A stretch of 63,917 bases of DNA, the filler included, from Octopus bimaculoides (lineage: Eukaryota), in NCBI RefSeq assembly GCF_001194135.2. It is 6 parts of 6 records of this genome, joined end to end, with 100 filler letters (N's around TTAATTAATTAA, not from the genome) between each part and the next. Parts side by side here need not be neighbours in the genome. Positions count along the whole stretch, not along the records: positions 52,309 to 61,062 come from NC_068984.1; 5 more parts are not named here. One strand, given 5' to 3'. Both the position numbers and the translations under genes were made by a program. Below, piece by piece: positions 1,268 through 62,676 of this stretch. Each line of letters opens with the position of its first letter. Position 1 is the first letter of the stretch. The notes beneath the pieces were generated by a model. That model was given only the letters and a program-made list of their open reading frames with translations. It searched no databases and had not been told where the DNA came from.

Positions 1268-1361
1268 GTAAATAATAATAATAATAATAATAATAATAAG
1301 GATAATAATAATAATAATAGTGAGAAGAAGAAGAAGAAAACAATGACAACAATAATAATAC

Positions 1362-1418
<57 letters not shown>

Positions 1419-1528
1419 CGACGATGACGATGATGATGATGATGATAAAAATAGAAATAATAATAATGGTGGTAGTAATAATAATAATAATAATAACAAC
1501 AATAATAATAATAATAATAATAATAATG
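1268..1528. repeat. Compound (AAT)n/(AAG)n/(GAT)n microsatellite
   Basis: Direct reading of trinucleotide runs. Confidence 0.95.
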
Positions 1529-1539
1529 CCCTGATACCA

Positions 1540-1705
1540 GGCAGTGGCTCTCATGGTTTCTGATCTTGACTGATTGGAAGTGTTCGGTAAAAGAGACCGA
1601 TAGAATAAGTACTAGACTTACAAAGAATAAGTCCTGTGGTTGATTTGCTTGACTAAAAGTGTTGCTCCAGCATGGTCATAGTCAAATGACTGAAACAAGT
1701 AAAAC
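1540..1705 (-). mobile_element. SINE family C copy
   Basis: Reverse complement of 'cttgtttcagtcatttgactg..gccatgctggagcac...gtacttattctatcggtctc', also seen at 8.36, 20.95, 34.48, 56.1 and 60.64 kb. Confidence 0.75.
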
Positions 1706-2570
1706 AGTAAAAGAGTACAAACATTTGTCTCCTTTCAGTTTTGATCTTCCAAATCCACAAGATTTTGGTCGTCCCAAGACTATACTAGAAGCAATGCAAG
1801 GGAACTGAACCCGAAACTATATGAATGGGAAGAAAGCTTCTTAGTCATATGGACATGTCTGCACTTAACATACAGATGGTACTTATTTTATCACTACTGA
1901 AATGGGTAGTTAACCTTAGCAGCATTTGAACCCAGAATCCCAATGGATGTAAATAAAACCACTTGGCAAGTTTGTCCACCACTCTACAAATTCTGCCATC
2001 TGATAATTTGTTTAATATTAGAAGATTAAAAAGAGAATGTAAATAGAAAGGAAAAAGTAAGTTCACGAATAGAACATAAAAAGCAAAAGAATAAATAAAT
2101 AAATATAAAGGTTATTGATTTTTAAAATACTCAAATTTAGTGATTATGATAATAATGATGAGAATGATGCTCACAGTAATCATCGCTGTCATCGTCGTCA
2201 TCACCAACAGTTTATTATTATTAATGTTGTTGTTATTATTATGTTTGTGGTGAAGGTGGTAACAGGGAAGGTTAGATATAATGCTTGCATTAGATCTACA
2301 TTAAATTGATCAACGAGCCAAGTAAATTTGACTAAATGAAGCCATGGTATTAATTTAGTGCCAGGGACTCTTAGGGAGTTCAGCTTCACTGCTTTTGACA
2401 GGGAGATGTGTATCTAACATATATCAATAGGGACATCACATACGTGCATGTGTGTGTGTGTGTGTCTGTGTGTGAGTGTGTGTGTGGTTGTATGGGTTTG
2501 TGCACGTGTGTACACGTATGTAAAATCATCTGTGCTTGAAGATAAACAGTGAAAACACATGCAGATGCAC

Positions 2571-2627
<57 letters not shown>

Positions 2628-2719
2628 ATATATATATATATTATATATGTATATATATCTTCTAATACATTTGTTTCTACATGCGCATATGTATACGTAT
2701 GTATTCTTCTCTCCTTCTC

Positions 2720-3200
2720 TCTTGGTGTTTTCTTGATACTGAAGAGGTTTCCAAAGTTTCTTTATTGATACTGATGTTATCATTTTTCCTGAATGTGTCT
2801 TCCAATGTTGGAGATGAATTGCTAATCACAAAACAGGTGTTGAAACTTTGTGGATGTGAGCCTTGTCCTAGGAGTCATTGCTCACCTATTTTTTTTCTTC
2901 TTGGTCTATCTCTCTTCAGTATGTTGATGCCAAAAGTTTTCCACAACAAAGTCCCTTCTTTTGTGTGCTTGCCACCAGTTCTAATAATTTCTAGCTACTC
3001 TTTCCTATTTGTAAAGATAAATGTTGAATAAAGATGTGATATTCTGATTGGAACCATGCCAGCATTTGTTATGTACACTTATTGTCGGTGAATTTCTGTA
3101 TGTTCAGTGGACAAGATTTATCTGGGATTTTTGTGCTTGACCTATTTTTGTATGTCACTGGAATTGATTTTTGTTTTTTTTGTAAATTATGATTTGGTTT
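2720..3200 (-). mobile_element. Possible highly decayed Penelope-like (GIY-YIG) remnant
   Basis: Broken minus-strand translations give ...NKC..., ...KIGEQ*L...H and IKKLWKP, loosely matching the order of PLE endonuclease motifs; many stops. Confidence 0.3.
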
Positions 3201-3315
3201 CTTTTAAGTTTTTCTGTTGCCAATGCATTCCTGTTTATGACATAGTTAACCCATTTGTCATTCAAAACCTACCGTAATTGTATTTTTTTTTTCTGAATAA
3301 AATCTCTCAACTTAC

Positions 3316-3359
3316 CATATTTGTTGTTGATGTGTTGTCTAAATCTTTAAATTATAAAG
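3316..3359 (-). other. Candidate 44-nt exon (non-coding, ending in ATG)
   Basis: Minus strand: acceptor tattctctttacacag| and donor ATG|gtaagt. All three frames contain stops, so it would be a 5' UTR exon ending in a possible start codon. Confidence 0.35.
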
Positions 3360-3563
3360 CTGTGTAAAGAGAATACAACAGCATGATGCACCAAAATCTC
3401 AAGTTATAGTTGTACAACATGAGAGAAACACACTCAGCTCACAATGTCACCATCAAGGAATAAAGAGGTGAACAAAATGCTAGCAAGATAAGTGAAAGAT
3501 GAATCTTCTGATTCACCTAGTATAGTAACTTGAAAAGGTCTTCCTTCTGCACCATATGAATAT

Positions 3564-3755
3564 TGGTTTCAAATTTTGGCACAAGGCCAGCAATTTCGGG
3601 AATTGGGTACGATAAATTGATTACATCAACCCCAATGTTCAACTGATACTTATTTTATTGACCCGGAATGAATGAAAGGTAAAGTCAGCTTTGGTGGAAT
3701 TTAAACACAGAACATTAAGAGAGACATAATGCCACTAAGCATTGTGTCCAGTATG
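3564..3755 (-). mobile_element. SINE family A copy
   Basis: Reverse complement of the family A body; CpGs decayed to TpG/CpA. Confidence 0.75.
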
Positions 3756-3989
3756 TCTAGATAGATTAATATTAATTTACAATACCTTGTCATCAACTCC
3801 AAGTGCATCACCACAAGATAGAATCAGTGAACAGAGTTATATCGGAAAACATTTTGCCCAGCATGCTAATGATTCTGTCAGCTTGCTACCTTTCACCAAA
3901 TGAATATTGAATGTATTCATCTTTGTTATGCTGACAGAGAGGTCAACCATTTTTTAAAGATAAGCTGAGTAAAGATGAATTAAGTAAAA

Positions 3990-4240
3990 ATCCTTGTCAT
4001 CCATAAACACAGGCTTGTCCCTTACAGGTGATGGTGCCACATAAAATGCACTTGTGCTTATGCTGCATAAATACACCTGTGTTGGTAACACATGAAAAGC
4101 ACCCGGCATACTCGGTAAAATGGCTGGTGTTAAGAATGACATCTCCAGCCATAGAAACCATGCCACGATAGACAATTGGAATTTGGACAGTTCGCTGGCT
4201 GTCCAGCTTTTGTCAAACTGTCCAACCCAAGTCAGCATAG
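3990..4240 (-). mobile_element. RTE-3'-UTR-related repeat (family E)
   Basis: Contains 'ggtgccacataaaatgcac' and 'aaaagcaccc', related to copies at 7.6, 8.1, 17.3, 21.5, 24.1 and 33.9 kb. Confidence 0.6.
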
Positions 4241-5306
4241 AAAATGTGCATAAAATGATGATAATGGTTACGATGAAGTTAATGCAACAGGTAGATTGGA
4301 TCTGGTTAAAAATGAAACAGCATTGTCATTGACATATTGGTACTCACAGATTAAGGCTGCAGATGTATGATTTTACAATTTATGTTACTATAGGTTAACT
4401 AGTCCTTCATCATATCAGCATTGAAAAGTAACACCAAGTTTGGATTTATAGATGACTTTTATCTATTCATCAGTTACATACTTGTGAAGGCACAAGTACA
4501 AACTCATTTAACACATTTACTATATTTATTACATGACTAAGTTTTTAAACCTAACTATTAGAAGTGTGCATTATACATAAGAATTGTTACCCATATTTTT
4601 CTAGTCAAATATGTTGCCAGATATTAGCTGTATCTACTGTCCAATCTACATGATGCATGTAACAAAGACTTAAGGTGACTCAAATACTGCTATAATTTCC
4701 TCTGATAGTGGAAAGCTATTAAATATTTGGCACAAGAAACAGATACTTGTCCCGTGGAATTACTGTTGTCAAGCTTCTGTATCTAAGGCTAGCATGTAAT
4801 AACTCCTTTGCTGAAAATATTATTTCACTTATTTAATATGAAAATTAAATGAATAAATAATCAATAAGGATATTATGTAGAAGCTGTCATTATTGAAAAG
4901 CGAACATAATTTGCAAAAAGAAAAAAATGATTTTGTTAACATCACTATATACATTTCTATTCAAAGAATGAAAATATTCAATAATAAAAGTATTTAAATA
5001 GAAGTGATTACATTCTGGATGACTTTTCACGAGTTCATTCTACAGGAGATACACTTTTACAGCTTAGACCAGTAAAGATCAAAGAACACTTTTAAATTTG
5101 CATATTGTTCTGAAGATATGAGAAATTTTTCAATGTAATTATATGAGCTCAGACTAAGCACTTCTTTTTCTATAATTCATATTAAAGAAAAAAAAAAAAA
5201 CAGGGCATGTTATACATGAGAGAGATGTTTCCAAAATTTCATAGCTCATAATTAGTAGTGTGCATCATGCATNNNNNNNNNNTATACACACATATATATA
5301 CATATA

Positions 5307-52308: not shown

Positions 52309-52342
<34 letters not shown>

Positions 52343-52589
52343 GTAATAGTCAGCAGATTCTCGCGGGATATAGAAATGGAATTCCGGTAAGTTAAGTGTT
52401 CATACGTGATAACTAATCAAGGAAAGTTTCTCCACCAGACAGAAGAAGACGTCCATCATTGTCTTGTCGATCTCCCCTCTCTGTAATGATGAAGACTTCA
52501 AGCATCTCTGAATCGATGAGAATGTTGCATTGGTTGGTGCCGTGACTAAAACTAGATTAACGAAAGACCATTCCTGTAGACTCCAGAAA

Positions 52590-52800
52590 ATTGGAACTCA
52601 GAGTTGTCTGAATTTAACAAAACCATTTCTAACAATGATTTTGCAATGTCAGTGTTAGTACCAACATTTGGAACATTGAACTGGACACTCGACGAGATAC
52701 GCAGCATTGACATCAAAACCAGAAATGTAATGGCCATTTCCATTTTGACAGCGACACCGATAGAATATTTATGTGAGATGAAGTAATGGCGACAGAAGCA
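52590..52800 (+). mobile_element. Short Dong/R4-like LINE RT fragment
   Basis: FAMSVLVPTFGTLNWTLDEIRSIDIKTRN matches the A.PVL..FG.L.WT..EI..ID.KTR motif. Confidence 0.7.
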
Positions 52801-53188
52801 TAAGATCAGGCCAAACAGCCTCTGAATGTCGCATTGTATCACTCTGACAACACCTGTGACGCCTAAACCAAACACGAATCAACTCAAGTAATTTATTAAA
52901 ATCACATACTGATTGGTCAGAATACAATTTGCAAAAATTAACATTCTGGAGCTTATACAAATATATTTAAGGCACACATTTTAGCCATCTCCCTACAGTT
53001 GTAAATTATAAAATATAACTGTCATCACTACTACATGAACCTGAAAATTGCATAGTTTAATGCATGAAAGTTCTAGTTCAATCAGAATGGACATTTAATA
53101 TTTTATCATTTCATTATAATATATCTTATATTATCTTGTATTATTATAAGATTGTAAATAAAACGAGAGTCAAAGTTGGAATTTTGGA

Positions 53189-53222
<34 letters not shown>

Positions 53223-53289
53223 AATATATGAGTATATGCATATATATGTACATGTATGTACATACCTTCATCTACATGTACATATAGAT

Positions 53290-53575
53290 ACATAACTGGG
53301 TACATGACGTGGCATATGAACATGGACAAAATGATAAACAAGGTACAACAAACAAGCAAGCCACATAGAAACATCTCCTTCATCAGCTGCCACCATTAAA
53401 ACACCGGCGTTTCGAAGAATTAAGGCAGTACGCATCGTTGAAATGGTTCTTCCCACGAACAAAAATTAAATTATTTTCGTGGAGGGTAGTGGCGGACGGA
53501 AAATAAGACAGGAAAACGAAACGATGAAAAAACGAACAAGCATAAAGGCTGTACAGGCAGACGTGAAGTGTGTAT
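53290..53575. mobile_element. Dispersed repeat, possibly a Penelope-like terminus
   Basis: Non-simple CpG-rich block between (TA)n runs; carries GAAAC and CTGATGA boxes on the minus strand. Confidence 0.4.
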
Positions 53576-54711
53576 ATATATATGAATTGGGTGCACCAAA
53601 TAGAAATTAGCACTCAACAATTTTGTTGTACGTATCTAAATTAGAAGTTAACACGTCTCCACCATACGTAAAATCAAAATTTCGTTACACTCTTTCTCGT
53701 TCAATAAAAATCAGATTGCCGATAGTGAGAGATTCAAAGATAGTTACAGAGAGAGAAGGGGAGAGGGAAGGAGAGAGAGAGAGCCAAACAAACAGATAGA
53801 CAGAAACTTAGTCATATATACAGACATAAAAACTAGATACAGTAATATCTAACTACATTTTTGCGTGTAGAGCTTAGAAATTATGAAAGAATCATTTCTA
53901 TCATAATTTAAAAGGTTTTGTAATGATGTTCTTAAGCAGTACTCTTGCAGTTATAGGAATATTTTGGTTCAGCATTTAACAAACAATCACAGTTAAAACA
54001 TTAAACAAATATAGCAATCACGATAGAAAATGTAATGTTAAATGGAATGAGTGTGATTGCCCGATTCATTAAACTCACTTCATTATTGCATCGAAATATG
54101 TCGAAGTATCTGTTCCTTTACAGAATAATTTCAGTAACAAGTAATTATTAATTAATTGCAATTTAATTAGTATTACAATACTAATTTGCATTGATTCTCT
54201 CATTTTCACGTGTTTTCTTTGTGATTGCGAATGTTGTTGAACAATTAACTATTCATACAAATTGTAGATACACTTCATGTTTCCGTTACCGCACGCATAT
54301 TTACGCTCATACGCATTCAAATATATGTATACACATATGCACAAACACCATACACACACATACGCAGCGTCTGAGAGCATATATCAATATATACATGTGT
54401 GTAAGTTTGTGTGTATCTGTTTGTGTATATATAGGTATAATATATGAATACATGTATGTGTGTTTATATATATATATACAAGGTATAAGTGTATATATAT
54501 ATATATATAAATGAGTTGGCGTAGAAAAAAGTGGCACTCAACACATTTTGTTGGAATTACATACGAGCCCGACGGGGTTAGCTTGACGAGCTAACAAAAG
54601 CTGAAGTTGAAAGAAGCGGAATCAAATTATTATTAAATAATGTATAAAATGCGCGTGCATGTACATGTGTTTGTGTATGTGTGCATCTGTCTATGTGTGT
54701 ATCTATATATG

Positions 54712-54761
<50 letters not shown>

Positions 54762-54764
54762 TAC

Positions 54765-54799
<35 letters not shown>

Positions 54800-55279
54800 T
54801 ACATACGCATGTGCATACGTACGTACATACATACATATATACATGCATATACACACATACATACACACATACACACAGACAGACACACATACACACATAC
54901 ATGCATACATACATACATACATACATACGTACGTACGTACATACATACATACATGCATACATACATATATACATACATACATACATACATACACACATAC
55001 ATACATATATGCTACAGAAACCAGAAAGCTATGGCTTTTGTGTTTATAGCAATGTAGAGCCGTTCGTTTTCTTGTTTGTGTTGGTGATTTTGGCTTCAAA
55101 TCACCAAGTTTAAACCCATTGGATATTTAGATGGAAGTGCCTGTCTCATATTTTTTGTTTGTTCTTCGGCGAGTGTATGTACTTTAATTACGAAACACTT
55201 CTCTTGAACCCGTTTGTATTGTAAACGTTTCAAGTCTTATAGCGTCAAGATCAGTTACTTCTGCTTAGACAATACCGCT

Positions 55280-55450
55280 TCTAACCCCGCACACTACAAT
55301 ACATGCAAGCACATTCACACACATAGACAACCTCCAATACAAACCCCGAGTCCCGCAACTACTCAAATCCTACCAACTGCCCACTGGGAGGAACCTGCCT
55401 CTCAAAATCTATGGTGCTTCCCTCACATCACTGACATTACAAGACACGAC
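55280..55450 (+). mobile_element. Penelope-like remnant (Cys motif preceding the GIY-YIG domain)
   Basis: TSNTNPESRNYSNPTNCPLGGTCLSKSMV resembles the PLE C.C....CPL.G.CL...VY motif. Confidence 0.55.
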
Positions 55451-55999
55451 ACACTGAAATTCTATATCTTGTTGGGCATAAATTGTTTCTTCGTATGGTA
55501 AGTTTTATTTTTATGTTTTTATATTTTTTCATTCACTGATGCTACCTGATTGTACTTCGTTATGATTCTAATTCTGATAAGGGTAACATGAATTTAGCGT
55601 TTATGAGCATTTTACGTACACACGCGCGCGCATGCACACACAGTGTATTTCAATTAAAAACAAGCGGGTAGTCCTGATTTGGAAATCGTGGACTGCTAGC
55701 CTTCGAAGATGTTATATATATATATGTGTGTACATAGGCTCAAAACGTAAAAGACTTTCTCACCTTCCTGAGCATTAAACTAATACACCTGTTTGTTGTT
55801 TACACACCTGTCTTCGTCTTTTGTTTTCTTTTTGTAAATTACCACTTTATATATGTGTGTGCGTGGGTGGGTGTGATGTACGTGCCTGCACGTGTGTCTG
55901 TATGTATGTGTGTATATATATTATTAGCGACGGCAACACAATTAATACCAGAGGGTACACTTTATATTACTTCTATATATATGTATATATATGTGTGTG

Positions 56000-56200
56000 T
56001 GTGTGTGTGTTTTTGTCTGTTACCACCTACCCCCACCCACTGCTTGACAACAAGTGTTGGTTTGTTTACATCCCCGAATGTATGCAATTCGGTAAAGGAT
56101 ACTGATAGTATATGTACCAGGCTTAAAAAATATGTACTGCGATCGATTAGTTCGATAAGTTCGGTATCTCCAGCTTGGCCGCAGTCTAACGACTGAAACA
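56000..56200 (-). mobile_element. SINE family C copy
   Basis: Reverse complement family C body with a (TG)n/(TA)n tail. Confidence 0.75.
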
Positions 56201-57687
56201 AGGCAGGGATAAGAAAATACATACACGAACACACATACACATACATACACACACATACACACACACACACACACACGTTACATCAAGCTATATTTATTTG
56301 TGCAGTTTTAATCCAACTAAAACAAGATGCCGCAGTGTACTTCACAATCGCGTAGTCATAGCTGTGCCGTATTTCTGCTATGTTTCTCGGGAGTCAAGTG
56401 AACGCGTACAAGTCACTTTTTTTTTTAGTTTTCGGTTCGAGATGGAAACAGGTTATATAGTGTAATAGCATTGACTCAAAATTTCATCTTTTATTTGAAT
56501 AAAGTTTGTCTTTTATTGAACTGCCACAACTTCGCGTTTCATTTCTGCTGTATATGGCGGACATTGTTGACGATGAAAGGAGACAAATGTCAAAGGTGAA
56601 AGATCTCTTGGTGGTTATTCAGGTAAAGATTTAAATGCGAGTGAAAATTCTTTACACGTTCGGAATATATCAGAGATGATTTAAGAGAAACAGTTCAGTT
56701 TCGAGCAAAAGATGAAAGGCGGTATATTTTGGTTCGGTCAATTTTAAAAAGAGGCCAATATGTATACAAGTGCAGAAAACTAAATTTCAGGTATATGCTG
56801 TGTGTGATATTTAAGGAAAGAGGCAAATGATTCTGTTCGCTTTTATTCAAAGACATAATCATATAAATTGTATTGGACGACATATACATGTATACACTCG
56901 GAGAAATATACACTATTTGAACCGAAAATTTTCCAGCAATACGTTTATCAGTTTGGGATGTATATTGCAAAGGCGCATGCGTGGCTGCGTGATAAGAAGT
57001 TCGCTTTCCAACTACTCGGTTCNNNNNNNNNNNNNNNNNNNNNNNNNNNNNNNNNNNNNNNNNNNNNNNNNNNNNNNNNNNNNNNNNNNNNNNNNNNNNN
57101 NNNNNNNNNNNNNNNNNNNNNNNNNNNNNNNNNNNNNNNNNNNNNNNNNNNNNNNNNNNNNNNNNNNNNNNNNNNNNNNNNNNNNNNNNNNNNNNNNNNN
57201 NNNNNNNNNNNNNNNNNNNNNNNNNNNNNNNNNNNNNNNNNNNNNNNNNNNNNNNNNNNNNNNNNNNNNNNNNNNNNNNNNNNNNNNNNNNNNNNNNNNN
57301 NNNNNNNNNNNNNNNNNNNNNNNNNNNNNNNNNNNNNNNNNNNNNNNNNNNNNNNNNNNNNNNNNNNNNNNNNNNNNNNNNNNNNNNNNNNNNNNNNNNN
57401 NNNNNNNNNNNNNNNNNNNNNNNNNNNNNNNNNNNNNNNNNNNNNNNNNNNNAGGAAAAAATATAGGAAAATGTGTTGTTGAAAATTCACCGAAATTACA
57501 AAAATTCGTAAATGTTTAAAATACATTTATTTACATATATACCAAACTAGTTTCAAAAATATCTTTTGTTTATCAATTGTAAAAATTTAAAGTTATGAAT
57601 TAGAAAAACAGCTTTAAAAGTTTCAATGTTGACAAATTAACATATTTAAAACAGATAAATTTAGCATTATGAATTAGGAGGGATAGA

Positions 57688-57890
57688 CTTACGGTGCACA
57701 GACATCAAATCCGTGACCCCCACCACTAGGAAAATTTCCATAAGCAAGCACCTAGACCAATGCCCTGTAGACACAAGCCCTAAATACCAAAACTCCCTCT
57801 ATCAATGCACTGGAAACACTTCAGCCTAATTTCGTTTAAATAAGGAAAACATACTGATTAAAAAATATAAACCACAGCCTTTAGAAAGAA
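57688..57890 (+). mobile_element. Penelope-like GIY-YIG endonuclease C-terminal remnant
   Basis: LTVHRHQIRDP/TTRKISISKHLDQC...RLNKENILIKKYKP (one frameshift) matches the PLE endonuclease R..H ... H ... E...I...KP pattern. Confidence 0.7.
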
Positions 57891-58027
57891 GAAAAGGCAG
57901 TAAAAAGAAATAAAAAGACCCAATTTCCCCACAAAAACAACCAGGAGCAACACATATTTTTTAAAAATCTTAGTAAGAATCTTCCACCCGGGTTTCGAAA
58001 CCACAACTCCAAATCACCATACAGACA

Positions 58028-58206
58028 CCAGTGGCCGACGTCACCTACCTCCAGTCCAATAAAATTTTATAAATACCAGTTGCTGACGTCACCTACCTCT
58101 AGTCCAATAAAATTTTATAAATACCAGTTGCTGACGTCACCTACCTCTAGTCCAATAAAATCTTATAAATACCAGTTGCCGACGTCACCTAACTCCAGAC
58201 CAATCA
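58028..58206 (+). repeat. 48-bp tandem repeat (~3.7 copies), each unit with CRE-, CCAAT- and TATA-like motifs
   Basis: Units start at 58028, 58076, 58124 and 58172; consensus CCAGTTGCTGACGTCACCTACCTCTAGTCCAATAAAATTTTATAAATA. Confidence 0.92.
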
Positions 58207-58895
58207 AAACCGAACTCCAGCAAATACAACGAAATGACCCTTTGCTGCTTTTGAGGTGGTTGTTGTAGCTGTAGTTGTTGATGTTGTTGTGATTTTTGTT
58301 GTTGTAATTCTTGCTGTTGTTGAAGATTTGATGGGTGGGTAACAAACTCTGGTTGAATGGGCTGTGAACAGCTGGAATCTGAGAAGTTGAACGTTTCATT
58401 AAGTAGGTCATCAATTGTGGTTGAATTAAGGCGTGTTAAAGGTTGAGGCTGGGTCAGTTGTTGCTGCTGTGGTTATTGTTGTTGTTGTTGCTGTGGTGAT
58501 TGTTCTTGTCTTTGCTGTGATGATTGTTGCTGTTGTTGTTGCTGCGGTGGATGTTGCTGTGGCCGAAGTGGTTGCTGTTATTGTCGTGATTGTTGTTGTT
58601 GTTGTTGCTGCTGTGGTAGTGGTTGTTGTTGCTCTTGACCAGTTTTTGAAGAGAAAAACACGTTGGAGTTTTTTTAATGTCTATTAATTAATTTAAATGC
58701 CATTTTAATTTGTTTAAATTTGTTTTGAATCTGCTTCTCGGAGCGATTTCTGAAAAGTTGAATTATATGTCTAGTTATTAGGTCCCGGTATGTGTCCATG
58801 TTCTCCGTTTGGGCAAGAGGATGCCATGAATTTATCAGAAGGTCTATTTCATTCTCAGACCAATTTTGCTTAGATTGTTGCTGTTGAGTAGTCAT
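58185..58895 (-). pseudogene. Myb/SANT-like domain plus Gln-rich protein reading frame with three internal TAA stops
   Basis: ATG at 58895 to TGA at 58185 in a single frame: MTTQQQQSKQNWSENEIDLLINSW...RNRSEKQIQNKFKQIK...RH*...QQQ...Q*...QQQ*...IDDLLNETFNF...QQ...VR*. Stops are at 58674, 58578 and 58473; no frameshift. Confidence 0.7.
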
Positions 58896-58934
58896 CTTAG
58901 AGTTTTTTTTATTTTTTATTTTAATATATTTGTT

Positions 58935-59377
58935 TGTTAATTGCCAAAATGAACGAAAAACTGCTACTCCTCCGTCCAAGACTTGTCAACAGAAGAGAAC
59001 CAATCATTCTTCATGACAATGCTCGGCCATCCTTTTCACTAATGACGCTCCAGAAGTTGAGGGCACTTGGCTACGAAGTTCTCCCCACCCAGCTTATTCC
59101 TCAGACCTTTCTCCTACTGACTACTACTTTTTCAAGCACCTTGATGGTTTCCTCCAAGAGAAGGGGTTCAAAAATCAAACTGATGCTGAAAGTACGTTCA
59201 AAGAGTTCGTCAGCTCCAGAACTCCAGATTTTTATGTTACCGGAAATAAACAAACGTGTAACTCGTTGACAAAAATGTGTTGATTGTAATAGTACTTACT
59301 TTGAAGAATAAAATTGTTGAAATATATTGTGATGAATTTCATGTTTCAAAATATTGCTTACTTTTTACTCAGCCTGA
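58935..59377 (+). mobile_element. Mariner transposon 3' half with right TIR
   Basis: PIILHDNARP...LGYEVL/PHPAYSSDLSPTDYYFFKHLD (D,D34D-type motifs, frameshifted). It ends CTTACTTTTTACTCAGCCTGA followed by TA. Confidence 0.9.
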
Positions 59378-59643
59378 TATACATATCAATATCAATATAG
59401 GCGGTGCTCCAACATAGCCGCTGTGAAATGACTTAAACAAGTAAAAGGAACTAAAAGAATATCTATATATATTCTTAATACGTTCCGACAGATTCCAATG
59501 CAAATATGTTAATTGCTGTTGTGTGTGTCGAGGACTTCCACAAACAACCTTGCCCGCACTTGTGCCTCGGAGGGTAACTCTCTAGGTTCAATACCATGGT
59601 CATTCATGACCGAAGTGGGTCTTCTATATACACACGCACATGT

Positions 59644-59688
<45 letters not shown>

Positions 59689-59714
59689 TGTGTGTGTTTG
59701 TTTTACGTATACAT

Positions 59715-60015
59715 ACGTCATCAGGTGATCGACCAGGCTATCGGATGCTGGTATACGTCGCTGGTCACAATGCGCATTGTATCATTTTAGCTTTCGAAAG
59801 ATGCCACCCCATCTGGCTACGCGGGCAGATCAACATTCTTTCCCCCCACCCCTGATCGGAAGACCATTCTATCGCAGTGTGCACCCATTTAGAGCTGGGT
59901 GGACTGGAGCAACGTGGAATAAAGTGGTTTTGTAAAAAGCACAGCGCATTGCTCAGTCCCGGAATCGCAATCATGATCGCTAGATCGCGAGTGCAACAGC
60001 CTAACCATGACTCCA
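59715..60015 (-). mobile_element. tRNA-derived SINE with a CORE-like central segment
   Basis: Minus strand has A-box-like 'gtggagtcatggttagg', B-box-like 'gattgcgattccggg', and a core 'ttgctccagtccacccagctctaaatgggt'. Confidence 0.7.
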
Positions 60016-60639
60016 CACGCCTTCACACGCAAACATATGTATGTGTGTGCGTGTGTTAATCGTGGTTGGTTGGTTGATTGATTGATTGATTGGCTAAATG
60101 AATGATCGATCGCTTATCTGAGAATGTCAGACGTTTCAAAAGACTGCAGCAATCAATGGATAAATATATTTTCGCACAGCTGAAATGCTTATAACATAAC
60201 AGATTAATAATTTCAGCGTGTGCGTTTCAAGATACAGAGAAGAGCATGAATGCGCATGCGCCCACAGGAAATTCATACAGATGTAATATCAATAGCTGGA
60301 CAAATCGATAGAGCGATACAGAGAGAAATTGGATTAATTAATTTGTCGACTGATTGAGTTATTGATTTTTTGATTGATTGGTTGTTTAATTGAGATATTC
60401 AGCATTGATATGAAACAAGAATATTCAATGTTGATCAAGAAATTTAACAGTTGCAATGCCTCAACAGAAATGCTCTCATATTTCAATTAGATAACGCTAT
60501 ATACTTTTAAACCAATTAACTTACAAACATCTTCGGCTGTAAATGTTTAATATATCGGGAAAATAAACGAAGATTTTTATAAATATTTTTTTGACGATGA
60601 GTTTTCCAGTTTAGACAGAGATCACTCTTTACTCGTTTA

Positions 60640-60840
60640 TTCTTTTACTTGTTTCAATCATTTGACTGTGACCATGCTGGAGCACCACCTTTAGTCGAAA
60701 TCATTCGTCCTACGACTTACTCTTTCTAAGCCTAGTGCTTATTATATCGGTCTCTTTCGCCGAACCGCTAGTTTACGGGGATGTAAACACACCAACATCG
60801 ATTGTCAAGCGATGGAGGGGGACACAGACACACAAATACA
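60640..60840 (+). mobile_element. SINE family C copy
   Basis: Family C body; its 3' end forms the left arm of the palindrome 60777-61062. Confidence 0.85.
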
Positions 60841-60845
60841 TACAT

Positions 60846-60876
<31 letters not shown>

Positions 60877-62676
60877 CATATAATATATATACATATATAT
60901 AATATATATATATACATATATATATGTATATATATATATTATATATATGTATATATATTATATGTATATATATATATGTGTGTGTGTGTGTGTATGTATG
61001 TGTTTGTGTGTCTGTGTCCCCCTCCATCGCTTGACAATCGATGTTGGTGTGTTTACATCCCCNNNNNNNNNNNNNNNNNNNNNNNNNNNNNNNNNNNNNN
61101 NNNNNNTTAATTAATTAANNNNNNNNNNNNNNNNNNNNNNNNNNNNNNNNNNNNNNNNNNNNTTTTCTTACCAAAGTCTACCTGCATAAATCTAAACCAG
61201 TAAATTTTAATAGATTTTCAGAAATACTTTCTCATATATTTTTCTTATTTTAAGAGAACATTCGATATATTAAAAAAACTTTATCTTTTCCATCTCTGAC
61301 GAGCGGAAGTATTGTCTATCAACAATGGAGTCCATTATAATGACAATACTTTTGTGAAACGATCGTAAGATGTATTAATTAACAAATTTTTAAACTGTCA
61401 TGTTTCATATATTTACATATATTTTAAATACAATTCTATTTTAGACATATATATCTTCGTGATATTAAATTTCATGCTATTATTTCAAAATACAGTATAT
61501 ATAATCGCTCGTATTAATGTCTAAAAATTTTATAGTATTAATATTTTTGACATTTTATACAAAGAGCACTCATTATAGATTCTGTGTATAATATTCTAAC
61601 AGAATATATTTAAGTAATATGTAGTAGGTAGAAGGATCCATTGGAGGGGCCCTATTATCGATTTTTTTCAACGGTCTGTCATGAGGATTCCAGACATAAA
61701 TTCTACTCACGTGTTAAATAAAATATAAAAGTTATATTGTCTGCAAAAATTAGAAATTGGACACGCAAAAAATCAATATTCAAAATAATCGAACATAAAG
61801 AATGAAGCCTGTAAAATATTTCTAAATTCGATGGCTCAATTAGTTTCATGAAAATGTATGAACTGTAAAAAAGCAATAAATATTATGATTTCTAAAATAA
61901 GTATAAGTGATACAGGGTGTCGCAACTGAATGTGGTGTGGAAGTTTGGTTTCATTTTTTAAGAATTTTAAGCATTCAAAGTATAAGTTCATTGTATTCGG
62001 ACACACTTATTAAATACGTTCTGGAATCAAAACTTTATGTACTGTCATCGGAAACGTTTAACTGGAAAAATACAGAATTTTCGGAGTTATGGGCATTGAA
62101 AGTGTACATGCATCAAGAAAGTGCAATAGTAAGGTTTAGCAGTTGAAAACTGAGTAGTGAAATGTAGAATTAGGTCCGCTGATCGTGCGAATCAAATATT
62201 GATCGCTTCGCTAAAAACTAACAATTGTAAGTGCTGATGCTATGGATTATTTCCCTTGAGTGTTTAAAAAATATTGTGTAGATGCTACGGGTTATTTCCC
62301 TTGGGTGTTTAAAAAAAATTAGTTATATGAGGTAGATATAAAGATCCCTTCCAGGTGCCGTATATGCATATATATATATGTATATATATGTATATATATA
62401 CACAATAGATCGCTAGCCACTACACACATTTTTTTTCTCTCCTTATTTCTTTCTGTGTTCCTTTCTGTGGAAGAGCGTNNNNNNNNNNNNNNNNNNNNNN
62501 NNNNNNNNNNNNNNNNNNNNNNTTAATTAATTAANNNNNNNNNNNNNNNNNNNNNNNNNNNNNNNNNNNNNNNNNNNNGCAGAATCGATAACACGCCGGG
62601 GAAAAATTCTTCGCGGCCTTTCGTCCGTCTTTACGTTGTGACTTCAAATTCCGCCGGTAGATAGAACGATAGACTG

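What the first reader, a model, noticed from the sequence alone, without database searches (positions are those of the whole stretch)
58185..58895. Hidden 237-codon Myb/SANT + polyQ transcription-factor-like frame, broken only by three TAA codons
The ORF track splits this region, but codon-by-codon reading shows one uninterrupted minus-strand frame from ATG 58895 to TGA 58185. The N-terminus (NWSENEIDLLINSW...RSEKQIQNKFKQIK) has the W-S-x-x-E...L...W and R-S-x-x-Q-I-x-N-K pattern of Myb/SANT-like (trihelix/MADF-type) DNA-binding domains. The rest is Gln/Pro-rich with an embedded acidic-hydrophobic patch (IDDLLNETFNF), the layout of a DNA-binding domain plus activation domain. All three internal stops are TAA, one C>T change from CAA (Gln), and two sit inside Gln runs. 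About 480 nt of slippage-prone CAA/CAG repeat has no frameshift, which suggests the frame was constrained until recently. The frame is seen in the sequence; the domain call comes from family knowledge; function is inference. It could be a TE-borne accessory ORF (PIF/Harbinger elements carry Myb/SANT ORFs) or a young intronless pseudogene.
Basis: partly seen in the sequence, partly recalled or inferred. Interest (0 to 1): 0.75.

Follow-up and report, generated by a model that had tools for sequence, protein, structure and literature searches.

The report
Decayed Myb/SANT-like gene relic
This is the broken remnant of a small Myb/SANT-type DNA-binding gene followed by an expanded CAA/CAG repeat, lying among transposon debris in what looks like an animal genome; it is an ordinary dead gene or transposon relic, not a hidden working transcription factor.

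Summary

- **Only the first 73 codons are more open than chance.** They have 0 stops against 4.4 expected. Codons 74-219 have 3 stops against 2.9 expected.
- **The last ~20 codons and the TGA belong to other sequence.** They lie in an unrelated tract on the opposite strand that ends in a 48-bp tandem array.
- **The domain call holds.** Residues 10-71 hit Pfam Myb_DNA-bind_4 above its curated cut-off (29.1 vs 27 bits).
- **Relatives are very rare.** A search of 1.84 billion proteins found two, both unannotated ORFs in raw assemblies. Both carry the same domain followed by a short EQQQQQ, which supports reading through the first TAA.
- **Both relatives sit next to transposon genes.** One is intact and lies upstream of a LINE endonuclease/reverse-transcriptase ORF. 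The other is decayed and runs in frame into a piggyBac transposase domain.
- **The window copy has no such partner.** It abuts a truncated mariner transposase remnant.

My verdict is a dead, 3'-truncated copy of a sparsely sampled, probably transposon-associated Myb/SANT-like ORF, with a Gln tract that is largely trinucleotide-repeat expansion. The Harbinger idea, the recent-constraint argument and a TAA=Gln code are not supported. Interest is low.

The parts
58677..58895 (-). Intact 73-codon ORF that encodes the Myb/SANT-like three-helix domain. The Pfam match covers residues 10-71, which is 58683-58868.
   Evidence: PF13837, 29.1 bits vs cut-off 27. (two homologues, E=1e-8 and 8e-7). (0 stops vs 4.4 expected). 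(predicted helices 14-24, 33-48, 53-72; pLDDT 62.7).
58674..58676 (-). First in-frame TAA (codon 74). It lies at the C-terminal edge of the domain, not in a Gln run.
   Evidence: The alignment with P0001 and P0002 continues past it to a shared hydrophobic-Ser motif and EQQQQQ. The Pfam match extends to residue 77 when the stop is masked.
58455..58673 (-). Short linker (KNSNVFFSSKTGQE) followed by Gln/Pro-rich tract 1, an imperfect CAA/CAG repeat. It carries the second TAA (58578-58580) and the third (58473-58475).
   Evidence: TRF reports periods of 3, 24 and 27 over 58457-58633. All three frames are open apart from the two TAAs.
58338..58454 (-). Non-repetitive middle segment (LTQPQPLTRLNSTTIDDLLNETFNFSDSSCSQPIQPEFVTHPSNL). 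It is open only in the Myb phase.
   Evidence: stops 0/1/5 in the three frames. No homologue in L001-L005 and no Pfam family.
58245..58337 (-). Gln-rich tract 2 (CAA/CAG repeat), the end of the A/C-rich coding-like sequence.
   Evidence: The composition flips at about 58240-58245.
58185..58244 (-). It is not part of the gene. It is the antisense of a different unit and includes the first, degenerate tandem-repeat copy. The TGA lies inside TGACGTCA.
   Evidence: (family D5).
58027..58209 (.). 48-bp tandem array, 3.8 copies at 93% identity. Each unit carries TGACGTCA, CCAAT and TATAAA-like strings. It truncates the remnant at its 3' side.
58925..59310 (+). Frame-shifted C-terminal third of a mariner (Hsmar1/SETMAR-type) transposase, cut off at about residue 218. 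It abuts the 5' side of the Myb ORF, with about 25 A-rich bases in between.
   Evidence: E=4.4e-48 to SETMAR chain 3f2k_A and 3e-18 to Mos1, with two frames joined by me.

Best explanation
The feature is a non-functional, 3'-truncated remnant of a small ORF. That ORF encoded an N-terminal Myb/SANT-like (Pfam Myb_DNA-bind_4, trihelix-type) three-helix DNA-binding domain followed by a short Gln run.

It belongs to a very sparsely sampled family whose only other known copies sit directly beside transposon enzymes. I therefore read it as a relic of a transposable-element-borne DNA-binding module rather than a host transcription factor.

In an intact copy, the basic third helix (RSEKQIQNKFKQIK) would contact DNA. 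I infer that it would tether the element's enzyme or RNP to specific DNA.

In this copy:
- The family's conserved EQQQQQ has grown by trinucleotide and 24-27-nt repeat expansion into about 130 codons of Gln/Pro-rich sequence.
- Three TAA nonsense codons have accumulated.
- The sequence is cut off at about 58245 by an unrelated unit that ends in a 48-bp tandem array.
- At its 5' side it abuts a truncated mariner remnant.
- Nothing beyond, at most, a 73-residue peptide could be made.

Shown: the frame, the domain call, the homologues and their neighbours, the truncation. Inferred: transposon membership, DNA tethering, repeat expansion.
For: - Frame and stops.
- Domain: PF13837 above its gathering score for the window copy and for P0001 (31.7 bits). 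Three predicted helices. W12, W24, L47-F48 and the RxxxQIxNKxKxI helix are invariant across the three family members.
- Rarity: exhaustive HMMER against 1.84 billion representatives finds only P0001 and P0002, both unnamed ORFs from raw-read assemblies. No annotated host protein was found.
- Context of the relatives: in L001 the intact 157-aa Myb ORF lies 455 nt upstream of, and on the same strand as, an intact 1093-aa Exo_endo_phos+RVT_1 ORF. A continuous A/C-rich, G-poor composition runs across both up to about position 1600. In L002 the decayed Myb domain continues in the same frame into a piggyBac DDE_Tnp_1_7 domain (E=4.6e-10, profile positions 88-253), with spacing that fits an N-terminal extension.
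- Decay: two of the three copies are stop-riddled.
- Expansion: the relatives have 5-6 Gln where the window has a long tract with TRF periods of 3, 24 and 27.
- Truncation and TE-rich setting.
- Past coding use of the tail: the middle segment is open only in the Myb phase. CAG (synonymous) outnumbers TAA and CGA by 13:2:1 in the tracts.
Against: - No transposase, endonuclease or reverse transcriptase lies in the window piece. Six-frame Pfam covers 57530-61062. tblastn with the L001 ORF2 and the L002 piggyBac part covers the whole piece.
- The two relatives point to different transposon classes, so at least one association is mere nesting.
- The closest LINE relative of L001 (71% identical ORF2, L003/L004) has no Myb ORF upstream.
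- More distant relatives carry ordinary ORF1s instead. L006-L008 have a shared non-Myb ORF1 that I read by eye as the coiled-coil/RRM type, with no Pfam hit on record. L005 has a 720-residue upstream ORF that I read by eye as esterase-like, never scanned.
- No TIRs, TTAA-CCC ends, poly(A) or target-site duplication could be defined around the window copy.
- Observed copy number is tiny (1-2 contigs per cluster).
- The structure model is of low confidence and gave no fold match.
Confidence: 0.6

Rival explanations
1. It is a duplicated or processed pseudogene of a lineage-specific host transcription factor (Myb/SANT-like domain plus Gln-rich tail). It is unrelated to any transposon, and the transposon neighbours in all three loci are coincidental in TE-dense genomes.
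For: - The two relatives sit beside different TE classes.
- LINE relatives lack the ORF.
- The window copy has no enzyme partner.
- A domain plus a Gln-rich tail is a common transcription-factor layout (general knowledge).
- The middle segment keeps phase.
Against: - No annotated parent or paralogue was found among 1.84 billion representative proteins or 5.8 billion clustered proteins.
- There is no poly(A) or target-site duplication, although the 3' end is missing.
- In L001, intact Myb and LINE ORFs lie on one strand with continuous composition.
- In L002 the Myb domain is in frame with piggyBac.
Confidence: 0.3
2. It is the accessory Myb-like ORF of a PIF/Harbinger DNA transposon.
For: Harbinger elements encode a trihelix/Myb-like second protein (established knowledge: Kapitonov & Jurka 2004; Sinzelle et al. 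2008, from memory). The domain class matches.
Against: There is no DDE_Tnp_4 transposase on either strand within 57530-61062, nor among the called genes of L001 and L002. No flanking TIRs were found. The relatives' neighbours are a LINE and a piggyBac instead.
Confidence: 0.05
3. The ORF is intact and is read with a nuclear code in which TAA encodes Gln and TGA is the only stop (ciliate-type, table 6).
For: All three internal stops are TAA, two of them in Gln runs, and the frame ends at TGA.
Against: - TAA makes up only 2 of 56 Gln-position codons in the tracts and TAG none. Organisms with this code use TAA heavily for Gln (established knowledge).
- The first TAA aligns with Val and Met in the relatives.
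- The terminal TGA lies in an unrelated tandem repeat.
- TGA-only ORFs in the piece are no longer than TAG-only or TAA-only ones.
- The piece carries an animal-type Hsmar1-like mariner and TG/TA microsatellites.
Confidence: 0.01
4. It is a chance open frame created by a CAA/CAG microsatellite next to a short random ORF.
For: The repeat part is no more open than shuffles. Long TAA-tolerant frames are common in this piece.
Against: The Pfam hit is above its gathering cut-off. Two independent homologues score E=1e-8 and 8e-7 in a library of 1.84 billion. The Myb segment has 0 stops vs 4.4 expected.
Confidence: 0.02

Closest known systems
Myb/SANT-like DNA-binding domain, Pfam PF13837 Myb_DNA-bind_4 (plant trihelix/GT factors; animal Myb/SANT-like domain proteins)
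   Same: The profile match is above the curated cut-off. The layout is three helices with spaced aromatic residues (W12, W24, F48) and a basic third helix.
   Different: No named member is detectably related at sequence level; only two unannotated ORFs are. This copy is broken. It also has a long CAA/CAG-encoded Gln tract that the two relatives lack.
Myb-like accessory protein of PIF/Harbinger transposons (and its domesticated derivative NAIF1)
   Same: It is a small, intronless ORF of Myb/trihelix type found in a transposon-rich setting.
   Different: The defining partner, a DDE_Tnp_4 transposase between TIRs, is absent from the window and from both relatives' loci.
N-terminal DNA-binding modules of transposon enzymes (for example the zinc-finger plus Myb motif of R2 non-LTR elements, or host-domain fusions of piggyBac-derived genes)
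   Same: In L002 the Myb-like domain is in frame with a piggyBac DDE domain. In L001 it sits in the ORF1 position of an APE/RT LINE.
   Different: R2 uses a restriction-like endonuclease and a single ORF. Neither arrangement recurs in the related LINEs I could fetch. Neither partner is present in the window.
Gln-rich (polyQ) activation regions of eukaryotic transcription factors
   Same: The composition is similar: Gln/Pro-rich tracts flank a short acidic-hydrophobic patch (IDDLLNETFNF).
   Different: Here the tract shows tandem 3, 24 and 27-nt periodicity. It is absent from the relatives, carries nonsense codons, and has no homologue or profile match. Repeat expansion is the simpler account.

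Membership tests
Myb/SANT-like domain (Pfam PF13837, Myb_DNA-bind_4) | Profile-HMM score at or above the family's gathering cut-off (27 bits) | tested here: met
   29.1 bits, E=1.3e-6 for the 73-residue ORF, and 29.0 bits for the stop-masked 236 residues. The relative P0001 scores 31.7 bits. Inside a 1177-residue six-frame string the score drops to 24.3 bits.
Myb/SANT-like domain (Pfam PF13837, Myb_DNA-bind_4) | Three alpha-helices with regularly spaced conserved aromatic residues and a basic recognition helix | tested here: inconclusive
   W12, W24, L47-F48 and R51..Q55-I56-x-N58-K59-x-K61 are invariant in the three-sequence alignment. AlphaFold2 gives helices 14-24, 33-48 and 53-72, but the mean pLDDT is only 62.7. 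Foldseek against the PDB gives no match with E<=0.001.
Myb/SANT-like domain (Pfam PF13837, Myb_DNA-bind_4) | Binds DNA | not testable with these tools
   This needs EMSA or a similar assay with an intact copy, such as the 157-residue ORF of L001.
PIF/Harbinger transposon (accessory Myb-like ORF) | A DDE_Tnp_4 (PF13359) transposase ORF in the same element | tested here: not met
   Six-frame Pfam scan of 57530-61062 finds only the Myb hit. The called genes of L001 and L002 show a LINE ORF2 and a piggyBac domain instead.
PIF/Harbinger transposon (accessory Myb-like ORF) | Terminal inverted repeats that flank the unit, with a 3-bp target duplication | tested here: not met
   No inverted repeat brackets 58027-58940. 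All reported arms are microsatellite or the interspersed repeat further right.
piggyBac-like element (N-terminal domain of the transposase) | DDE_Tnp_1_7 domain downstream in the same frame | tested here: not met
   In the window, tblastn with the L002 piggyBac part gives nothing (best E=3.8) and Pfam finds nothing. In the relative L002 the feature is met (E=4.6e-10).
piggyBac-like element (N-terminal domain of the transposase) | TTAA target duplication with CCC...GGG inverted termini | tested here: not met
   There is no TTAACCC, GGGTTAA or relaxed variant anywhere in 52309-61062.
Non-LTR retrotransposon (ORF1 position) | APE/RT ORF2 downstream on the same strand | tested here: not met
   In the window, tblastn with the L001 ORF2 gives a best E of 4.9. 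In the relative L001 the feature is met (Exo_endo_phos + RVT_1).
Non-LTR retrotransposon (ORF1 position) | The same ORF1 type recurs in related elements | tested here: not met
   L003/L004 (71% identical ORF2) have no Myb ORF upstream. L006-L008 carry a shared ORF1 with no similarity to the Myb profile, which I read by eye as the coiled-coil/RRM type. L005 carries a 720-residue upstream ORF that I read by eye as esterase-like. The HMM of the Myb family finds nothing in any of them.
Processed pseudogene of a host gene | An identifiable parent gene, a 3' poly(A) and a target-site duplication | tested here: not met
   No parent was found in the 1.84-billion or 5.8-billion protein libraries. The 3' end is lost at about 58245, so poly(A) and duplication cannot be assessed.
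Variant nuclear code with TAA=Gln | TAA/TAG used frequently at Gln positions, with TGA as the sole stop | tested here: not met
   In the Gln tracts the counts are TAA 2, TAG 0, CAA 41 and CAG 13. The first TAA aligns with Val and Met. TGA-only ORFs show no excess length.

The most novel reading that the evidence does not exclude
The Myb/SANT-like plus Gln-run ORF may be the DNA-binding module of a so far undescribed transposon lineage. One option is a CR1/L2-like LINE that has replaced the usual ORF1 with a Myb/SANT-like protein, as in L001. The other is a piggyBac transposase with an N-terminal Myb/SANT-like domain, as in L002. The window copy would then be a decayed fragment of that lineage.
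Probability: 0.3. Interest if true: 0.4.

Novelty: new member of a known kind. Interest (0 to 1): 0.15.

Why it matters
For the window itself it matters little. It is a dead fragment in a repeat-dense region, and it should not be annotated as a gene or a transcription factor.

One point is mildly interesting. The domain family is almost unsampled: two relatives among 1.84 billion proteins. Both relatives sit in positions where a transposon would carry its DNA-binding or nucleic-acid-binding module.

If that holds up in whole genomes, it would be one more case of modular exchange of ORF1 or N-terminal domains among mobile elements. It could also be a source of new Myb/SANT-type regulators by domestication.

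The case also carries a practical lesson. An open frame across a CAA/CAG repeat is not evidence of selective constraint.

Tried and rejected
- **Word-indexed protein searches.** A search with residues 1-88 found nothing. A search with the three-sequence profile returned only the two sequences already in it.
- **Exact-protein look-ups.** Four window ORFs (73 aa, 101 aa, the 84-aa antisense ORF and the 111-aa mariner ORF) are not on record. The source genome and extra copies could therefore not be reached.
- **Collection scans.** Metagenome and viral scans with the family profile returned no confirmed hits.
- **Structure.** PDB sequence search found nothing significant. The AlphaFold2 model is of low confidence and Foldseek against the PDB gave no match.
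- **Pfam on neighbouring remnants.** Pfam did not recognise the mariner remnant or the possible RT tail at the left edge. The mariner was identified through the PDB instead.
- **Rfam and tRNA scans.** Both returned nothing.
- **Literature.** Searches for the run accessions, for piggyBac with SANT-like, for Myb-like ORF1 of non-LTR elements and for PF13837 with transposable elements gave nothing useful.
- **The 16-nt direct repeat.** ATWAAAAAAACTCYAA at 58663-58678 and 58897-58912 brackets the Myb ORF (D13). I considered it as a possible duplication boundary and rejected it. It is A-rich low complexity, and homology to the relatives runs through it.
- **TTAA strings at the mariner junction.** I rejected these as a piggyBac target site. 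One lies inside the mariner coding homology, and no piggyBac terminus follows the other.
- **dN/dS.** I did not attempt it. The relatives are only 37-50% identical at protein level, with no detectable DNA similarity.

Full report
**1. The observation**

The minus strand of 58185-58895 translates as one frame of 237 codons, from ATG (58895) to TGA (58185). It has exactly three internal stops, all TAA, at codons 74, 106 and 141 (58676-58674, 58580-58578, 58475-58473). CAA occurs 52 times and CAG 17 times.

**2. Is it more than chance?**

Only in part.
- Dinucleotide-preserving shuffles give 4.4 +/- 1.9 stops for codons 1-73 against 0 observed (P=0.008).
- For codons 74-219 they give 2.9 +/- 1.5 against 3 observed (P=0.66).
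- In the two CAA/CAG tracts all three minus-strand frames are open, and the Gln frame is the only one with stops.
- If TAA is ignored, five longer frames (350 to 263 codons) exist in this 8.7-kb piece, because it is full of microsatellites.
- The phase is picked out by the Myb segment (stops 0/8/9 in the three frames) and by the non-repetitive middle segment 58338-58454 (0/1/5). They agree, which is modest evidence that the tail was once coding in this frame.
- The excess of synonymous CAG (13) over TAA (2) and CGA (1) in the tracts points the same way. These counts are not independent, because the tract is built of 24-27-nt tandem units.
- 'No frameshift in 480 nt' is weak evidence of constraint, because trinucleotide slippage preserves phase on its own.

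**3. Where the coding remnant ends**

The sense strand of the ORF is A/C-rich and G-poor. At about 58240-58245 the skews flip sign. The sequence becomes the antisense of another A/C-rich unit that runs on the plus strand from at least 57453.

That unit ends in a 48-bp tandem array (58027-58209, 3.8 copies, 93% identical). Each copy holds TGACGTCA, CCAAT and TATAAA-like strings.

The remnant is therefore about 217 codons and truncated at its 3' side.

**4. The 5' side**

About 25 A-rich bases upstream of the ATG begins the antisense of a mariner transposase remnant (58925-59310, plus strand, frame-shifted).
- It matches the C-terminal 122 residues of SETMAR/Hsmar1 at E=4.4e-48 and Mos1 at about 3e-18.
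- The first ~217 residues of that transposase are nowhere else in the piece.
- A 430-N assembly gap lies at 57023-57452.
- No tRNA or Rfam family is present.

**5. The domain**

- Residues 10-71 match Pfam PF13837 (Myb_DNA-bind_4) at E=1.3e-6 and 29.1 bits, against a gathering score of 27. With the first stop masked the match runs to residue 77.
- AlphaFold2 on a three-sequence alignment predicts three helices (14-24, 33-48, 53-72) at low confidence (pLDDT 62.7).
- Foldseek and a PDB sequence search found nothing.
- No other Pfam family is found in any frame of 57530-61062.

**6. Relatives**

- A word-indexed search found nothing.
- Exhaustive HMMER against 1.84 billion representative proteins found five hits at E<=1e-3. 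Only two are true relatives: P0001 (157 aa, 50% identity, E=1.3e-8) and P0002 (122 aa, E=8e-7). Both are unnamed ORFs from Logan assemblies of sequencing runs.
- The three sequences share N-W-S-E/D-x-E-[IV]-D, W24, L-F-x-x-R, Q-I-x-N-K-x-K-x-I and H73. After 12-15 further residues with a hydrophobic-hydrophobic-Ser motif, all three have E-Q-Q-Q-Q-Q.
- Reading through the first TAA is therefore justified. The relatives have Val and Met at that column, not Gln.
- Beyond the short Gln run nothing is shared.
- The relatives have 5-6 Gln where the window has about 130 Gln/Pro-rich codons. The long tract is best explained as expansion.

**7. Genomic context of the relatives**

*L001 (4.6 kb)*
- The intact Myb ORF (354-827) lies 455 nt upstream of, and on the same strand as, an intact 1093-residue ORF with Exo_endo_phos and RVT_1, that is, a LINE ORF2.
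- The A/C-rich, G-poor composition runs unbroken from position 1 to about 1600, across the start of ORF2.
- Against a unit: the closest relative of that ORF2 (P0007, 71% identity; L003/L004) shares no upstream homology and has no Myb ORF within 3.1 kb.
- More distant relatives have ordinary ORF1s. L006-L008 share a non-Myb ORF1 that I read by eye as the coiled-coil/RRM type (no Pfam hit on record). L005 has a 720-residue upstream ORF that I read by eye as esterase-like (never scanned).

*L002 (1.3 kb)*
- The Myb domain is decayed. The database protein P0002 is an artefact of a TGA=Trp gene call: the DNA has three in-frame TGAs, one of them at the conserved NWS tryptophan.
- The same frame continues into a piggyBac DDE_Tnp_1_7 domain (E=4.6e-10, profile positions 88-253). 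The spacing suits an N-terminal extension of the transposase.
- The first 87 profile positions could not be confirmed.

The two relatives implicate two different transposon classes. The window copy has neither partner.

**8. Interpretation**

The core conclusion is well supported: this is a dead, truncated remnant of a Myb/SANT-like ORF.

I favour transposon origin (about 0.6) for these reasons:
- No host protein of this family exists in very large libraries.
- All three copies sit among, or directly beside, transposon genes.
- Two of the three copies are decayed.
- The composition resembles a retroelement sense strand.

The main rival (about 0.3) is a pseudogene of a fast-evolving host factor.

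The remaining readings fare poorly:
- Harbinger is disfavoured, because no DDE_Tnp_4 and no TIRs were found.
- A TAA=Gln code is rejected. TAA is only 2 of 56 Gln-position codons, the first TAA is not at a Gln column, the TGA lies outside the gene, and the setting is an animal-type mariner with TG/TA microsatellites.
- A pure chance frame is rejected for the domain part.

**9. Source organism**

It is not established. The piece has TG/TA/TGTA microsatellites, an Hsmar1-like mariner and an interspersed repeat (55963-56202, 60648-60887, 59396-59447). From memory I recall that repeat as an abundant octopus SINE-like element. This is a recollection, not a test.

**10. Verdict**

The finding is real as sequence and ordinary as biology. 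It is a new, broken member of a known domain class. There is a modest lead towards an undescribed transposon-borne Myb/SANT module, which only whole-genome copy analysis can settle.

Noticed in passing
58027-58232: A 48-bp tandem array (3.8 copies at 93% identity, plus a degenerate copy). Each unit contains the palindrome TGACGTCA (a CRE-like string), CCAAT and TATAAA. It forms the end of an A/C-rich plus-strand unit that runs from at least 57453. Its identity is unknown; it may be the 3' or 5' repeat region of another mobile element.
   Followed up: partly
58925-59310 (+): A frame-shifted C-terminal third of an Hsmar1/SETMAR-type mariner transposase (E=4e-48 to PDB 3f2k), cut off at about residue 218. 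The missing N-terminal part is not in the piece.
   Followed up: yes
60777-61062: A near-perfect 286-nt palindrome: arms 60777-60919 and 60920-61062 with no spacer (92% complementary ungapped; 97% with gaps in self-BLAST). It is made of TA/TG microsatellite plus interspersed-repeat sequence and ends exactly at the edge of the piece. It could be a real inverted duplication or an assembly artefact.
   Followed up: no
55963-56202 (+), 60648-60887 (-), 59396-59447 (+): Three copies or fragments of one interspersed repeat, 71-81% identical. It contains ...CATCGCTTGACAA.CGATG.TGGTGTGTTTACGTCCCC... and ...GGCGGTGCTCCA.CATGGCCGC.GT.AAATGAC... From memory I recall it as an abundant octopus SINE-like element. 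This is unverified.
   Followed up: partly
52309-52800 (+): A stop-riddled frame (...FAMSVLVPTFGTLNWTLDEIRSIDIKTRNVMAISILTATPIEYLCEMK...). By eye it resembles the region just C-terminal to the RT domain of animal non-LTR retrotransposons. Pfam gave no hit.
   Followed up: partly
L002 (Logan SRR11869391), positions 53, 77, 119: The database protein P0002 exists only because the contig was translated with TGA=Trp. The DNA has three in-frame TGAs, one of them at the conserved NWS tryptophan of the Myb-like domain. The same frame then runs into a decayed piggyBac DDE_Tnp_1_7 domain.
   Followed up: yes
L001 (Logan SRR29346471), 354-827 and 1282-4563: An intact 157-residue Myb/SANT-like ORF sits in the ORF1 position of an intact APE+RT LINE. 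The related LINEs I fetched either carry a different, ordinary-looking ORF1 (my reading by eye) or have no recognisable ORF1 within reach. This may be a case of ORF1 replacement.
   Followed up: partly
57023-57452: A 430-N assembly gap about 600 bp beyond the tandem array. The true distance and content are unknown, which limits any statement about what lies downstream of the remnant.
   Followed up: no
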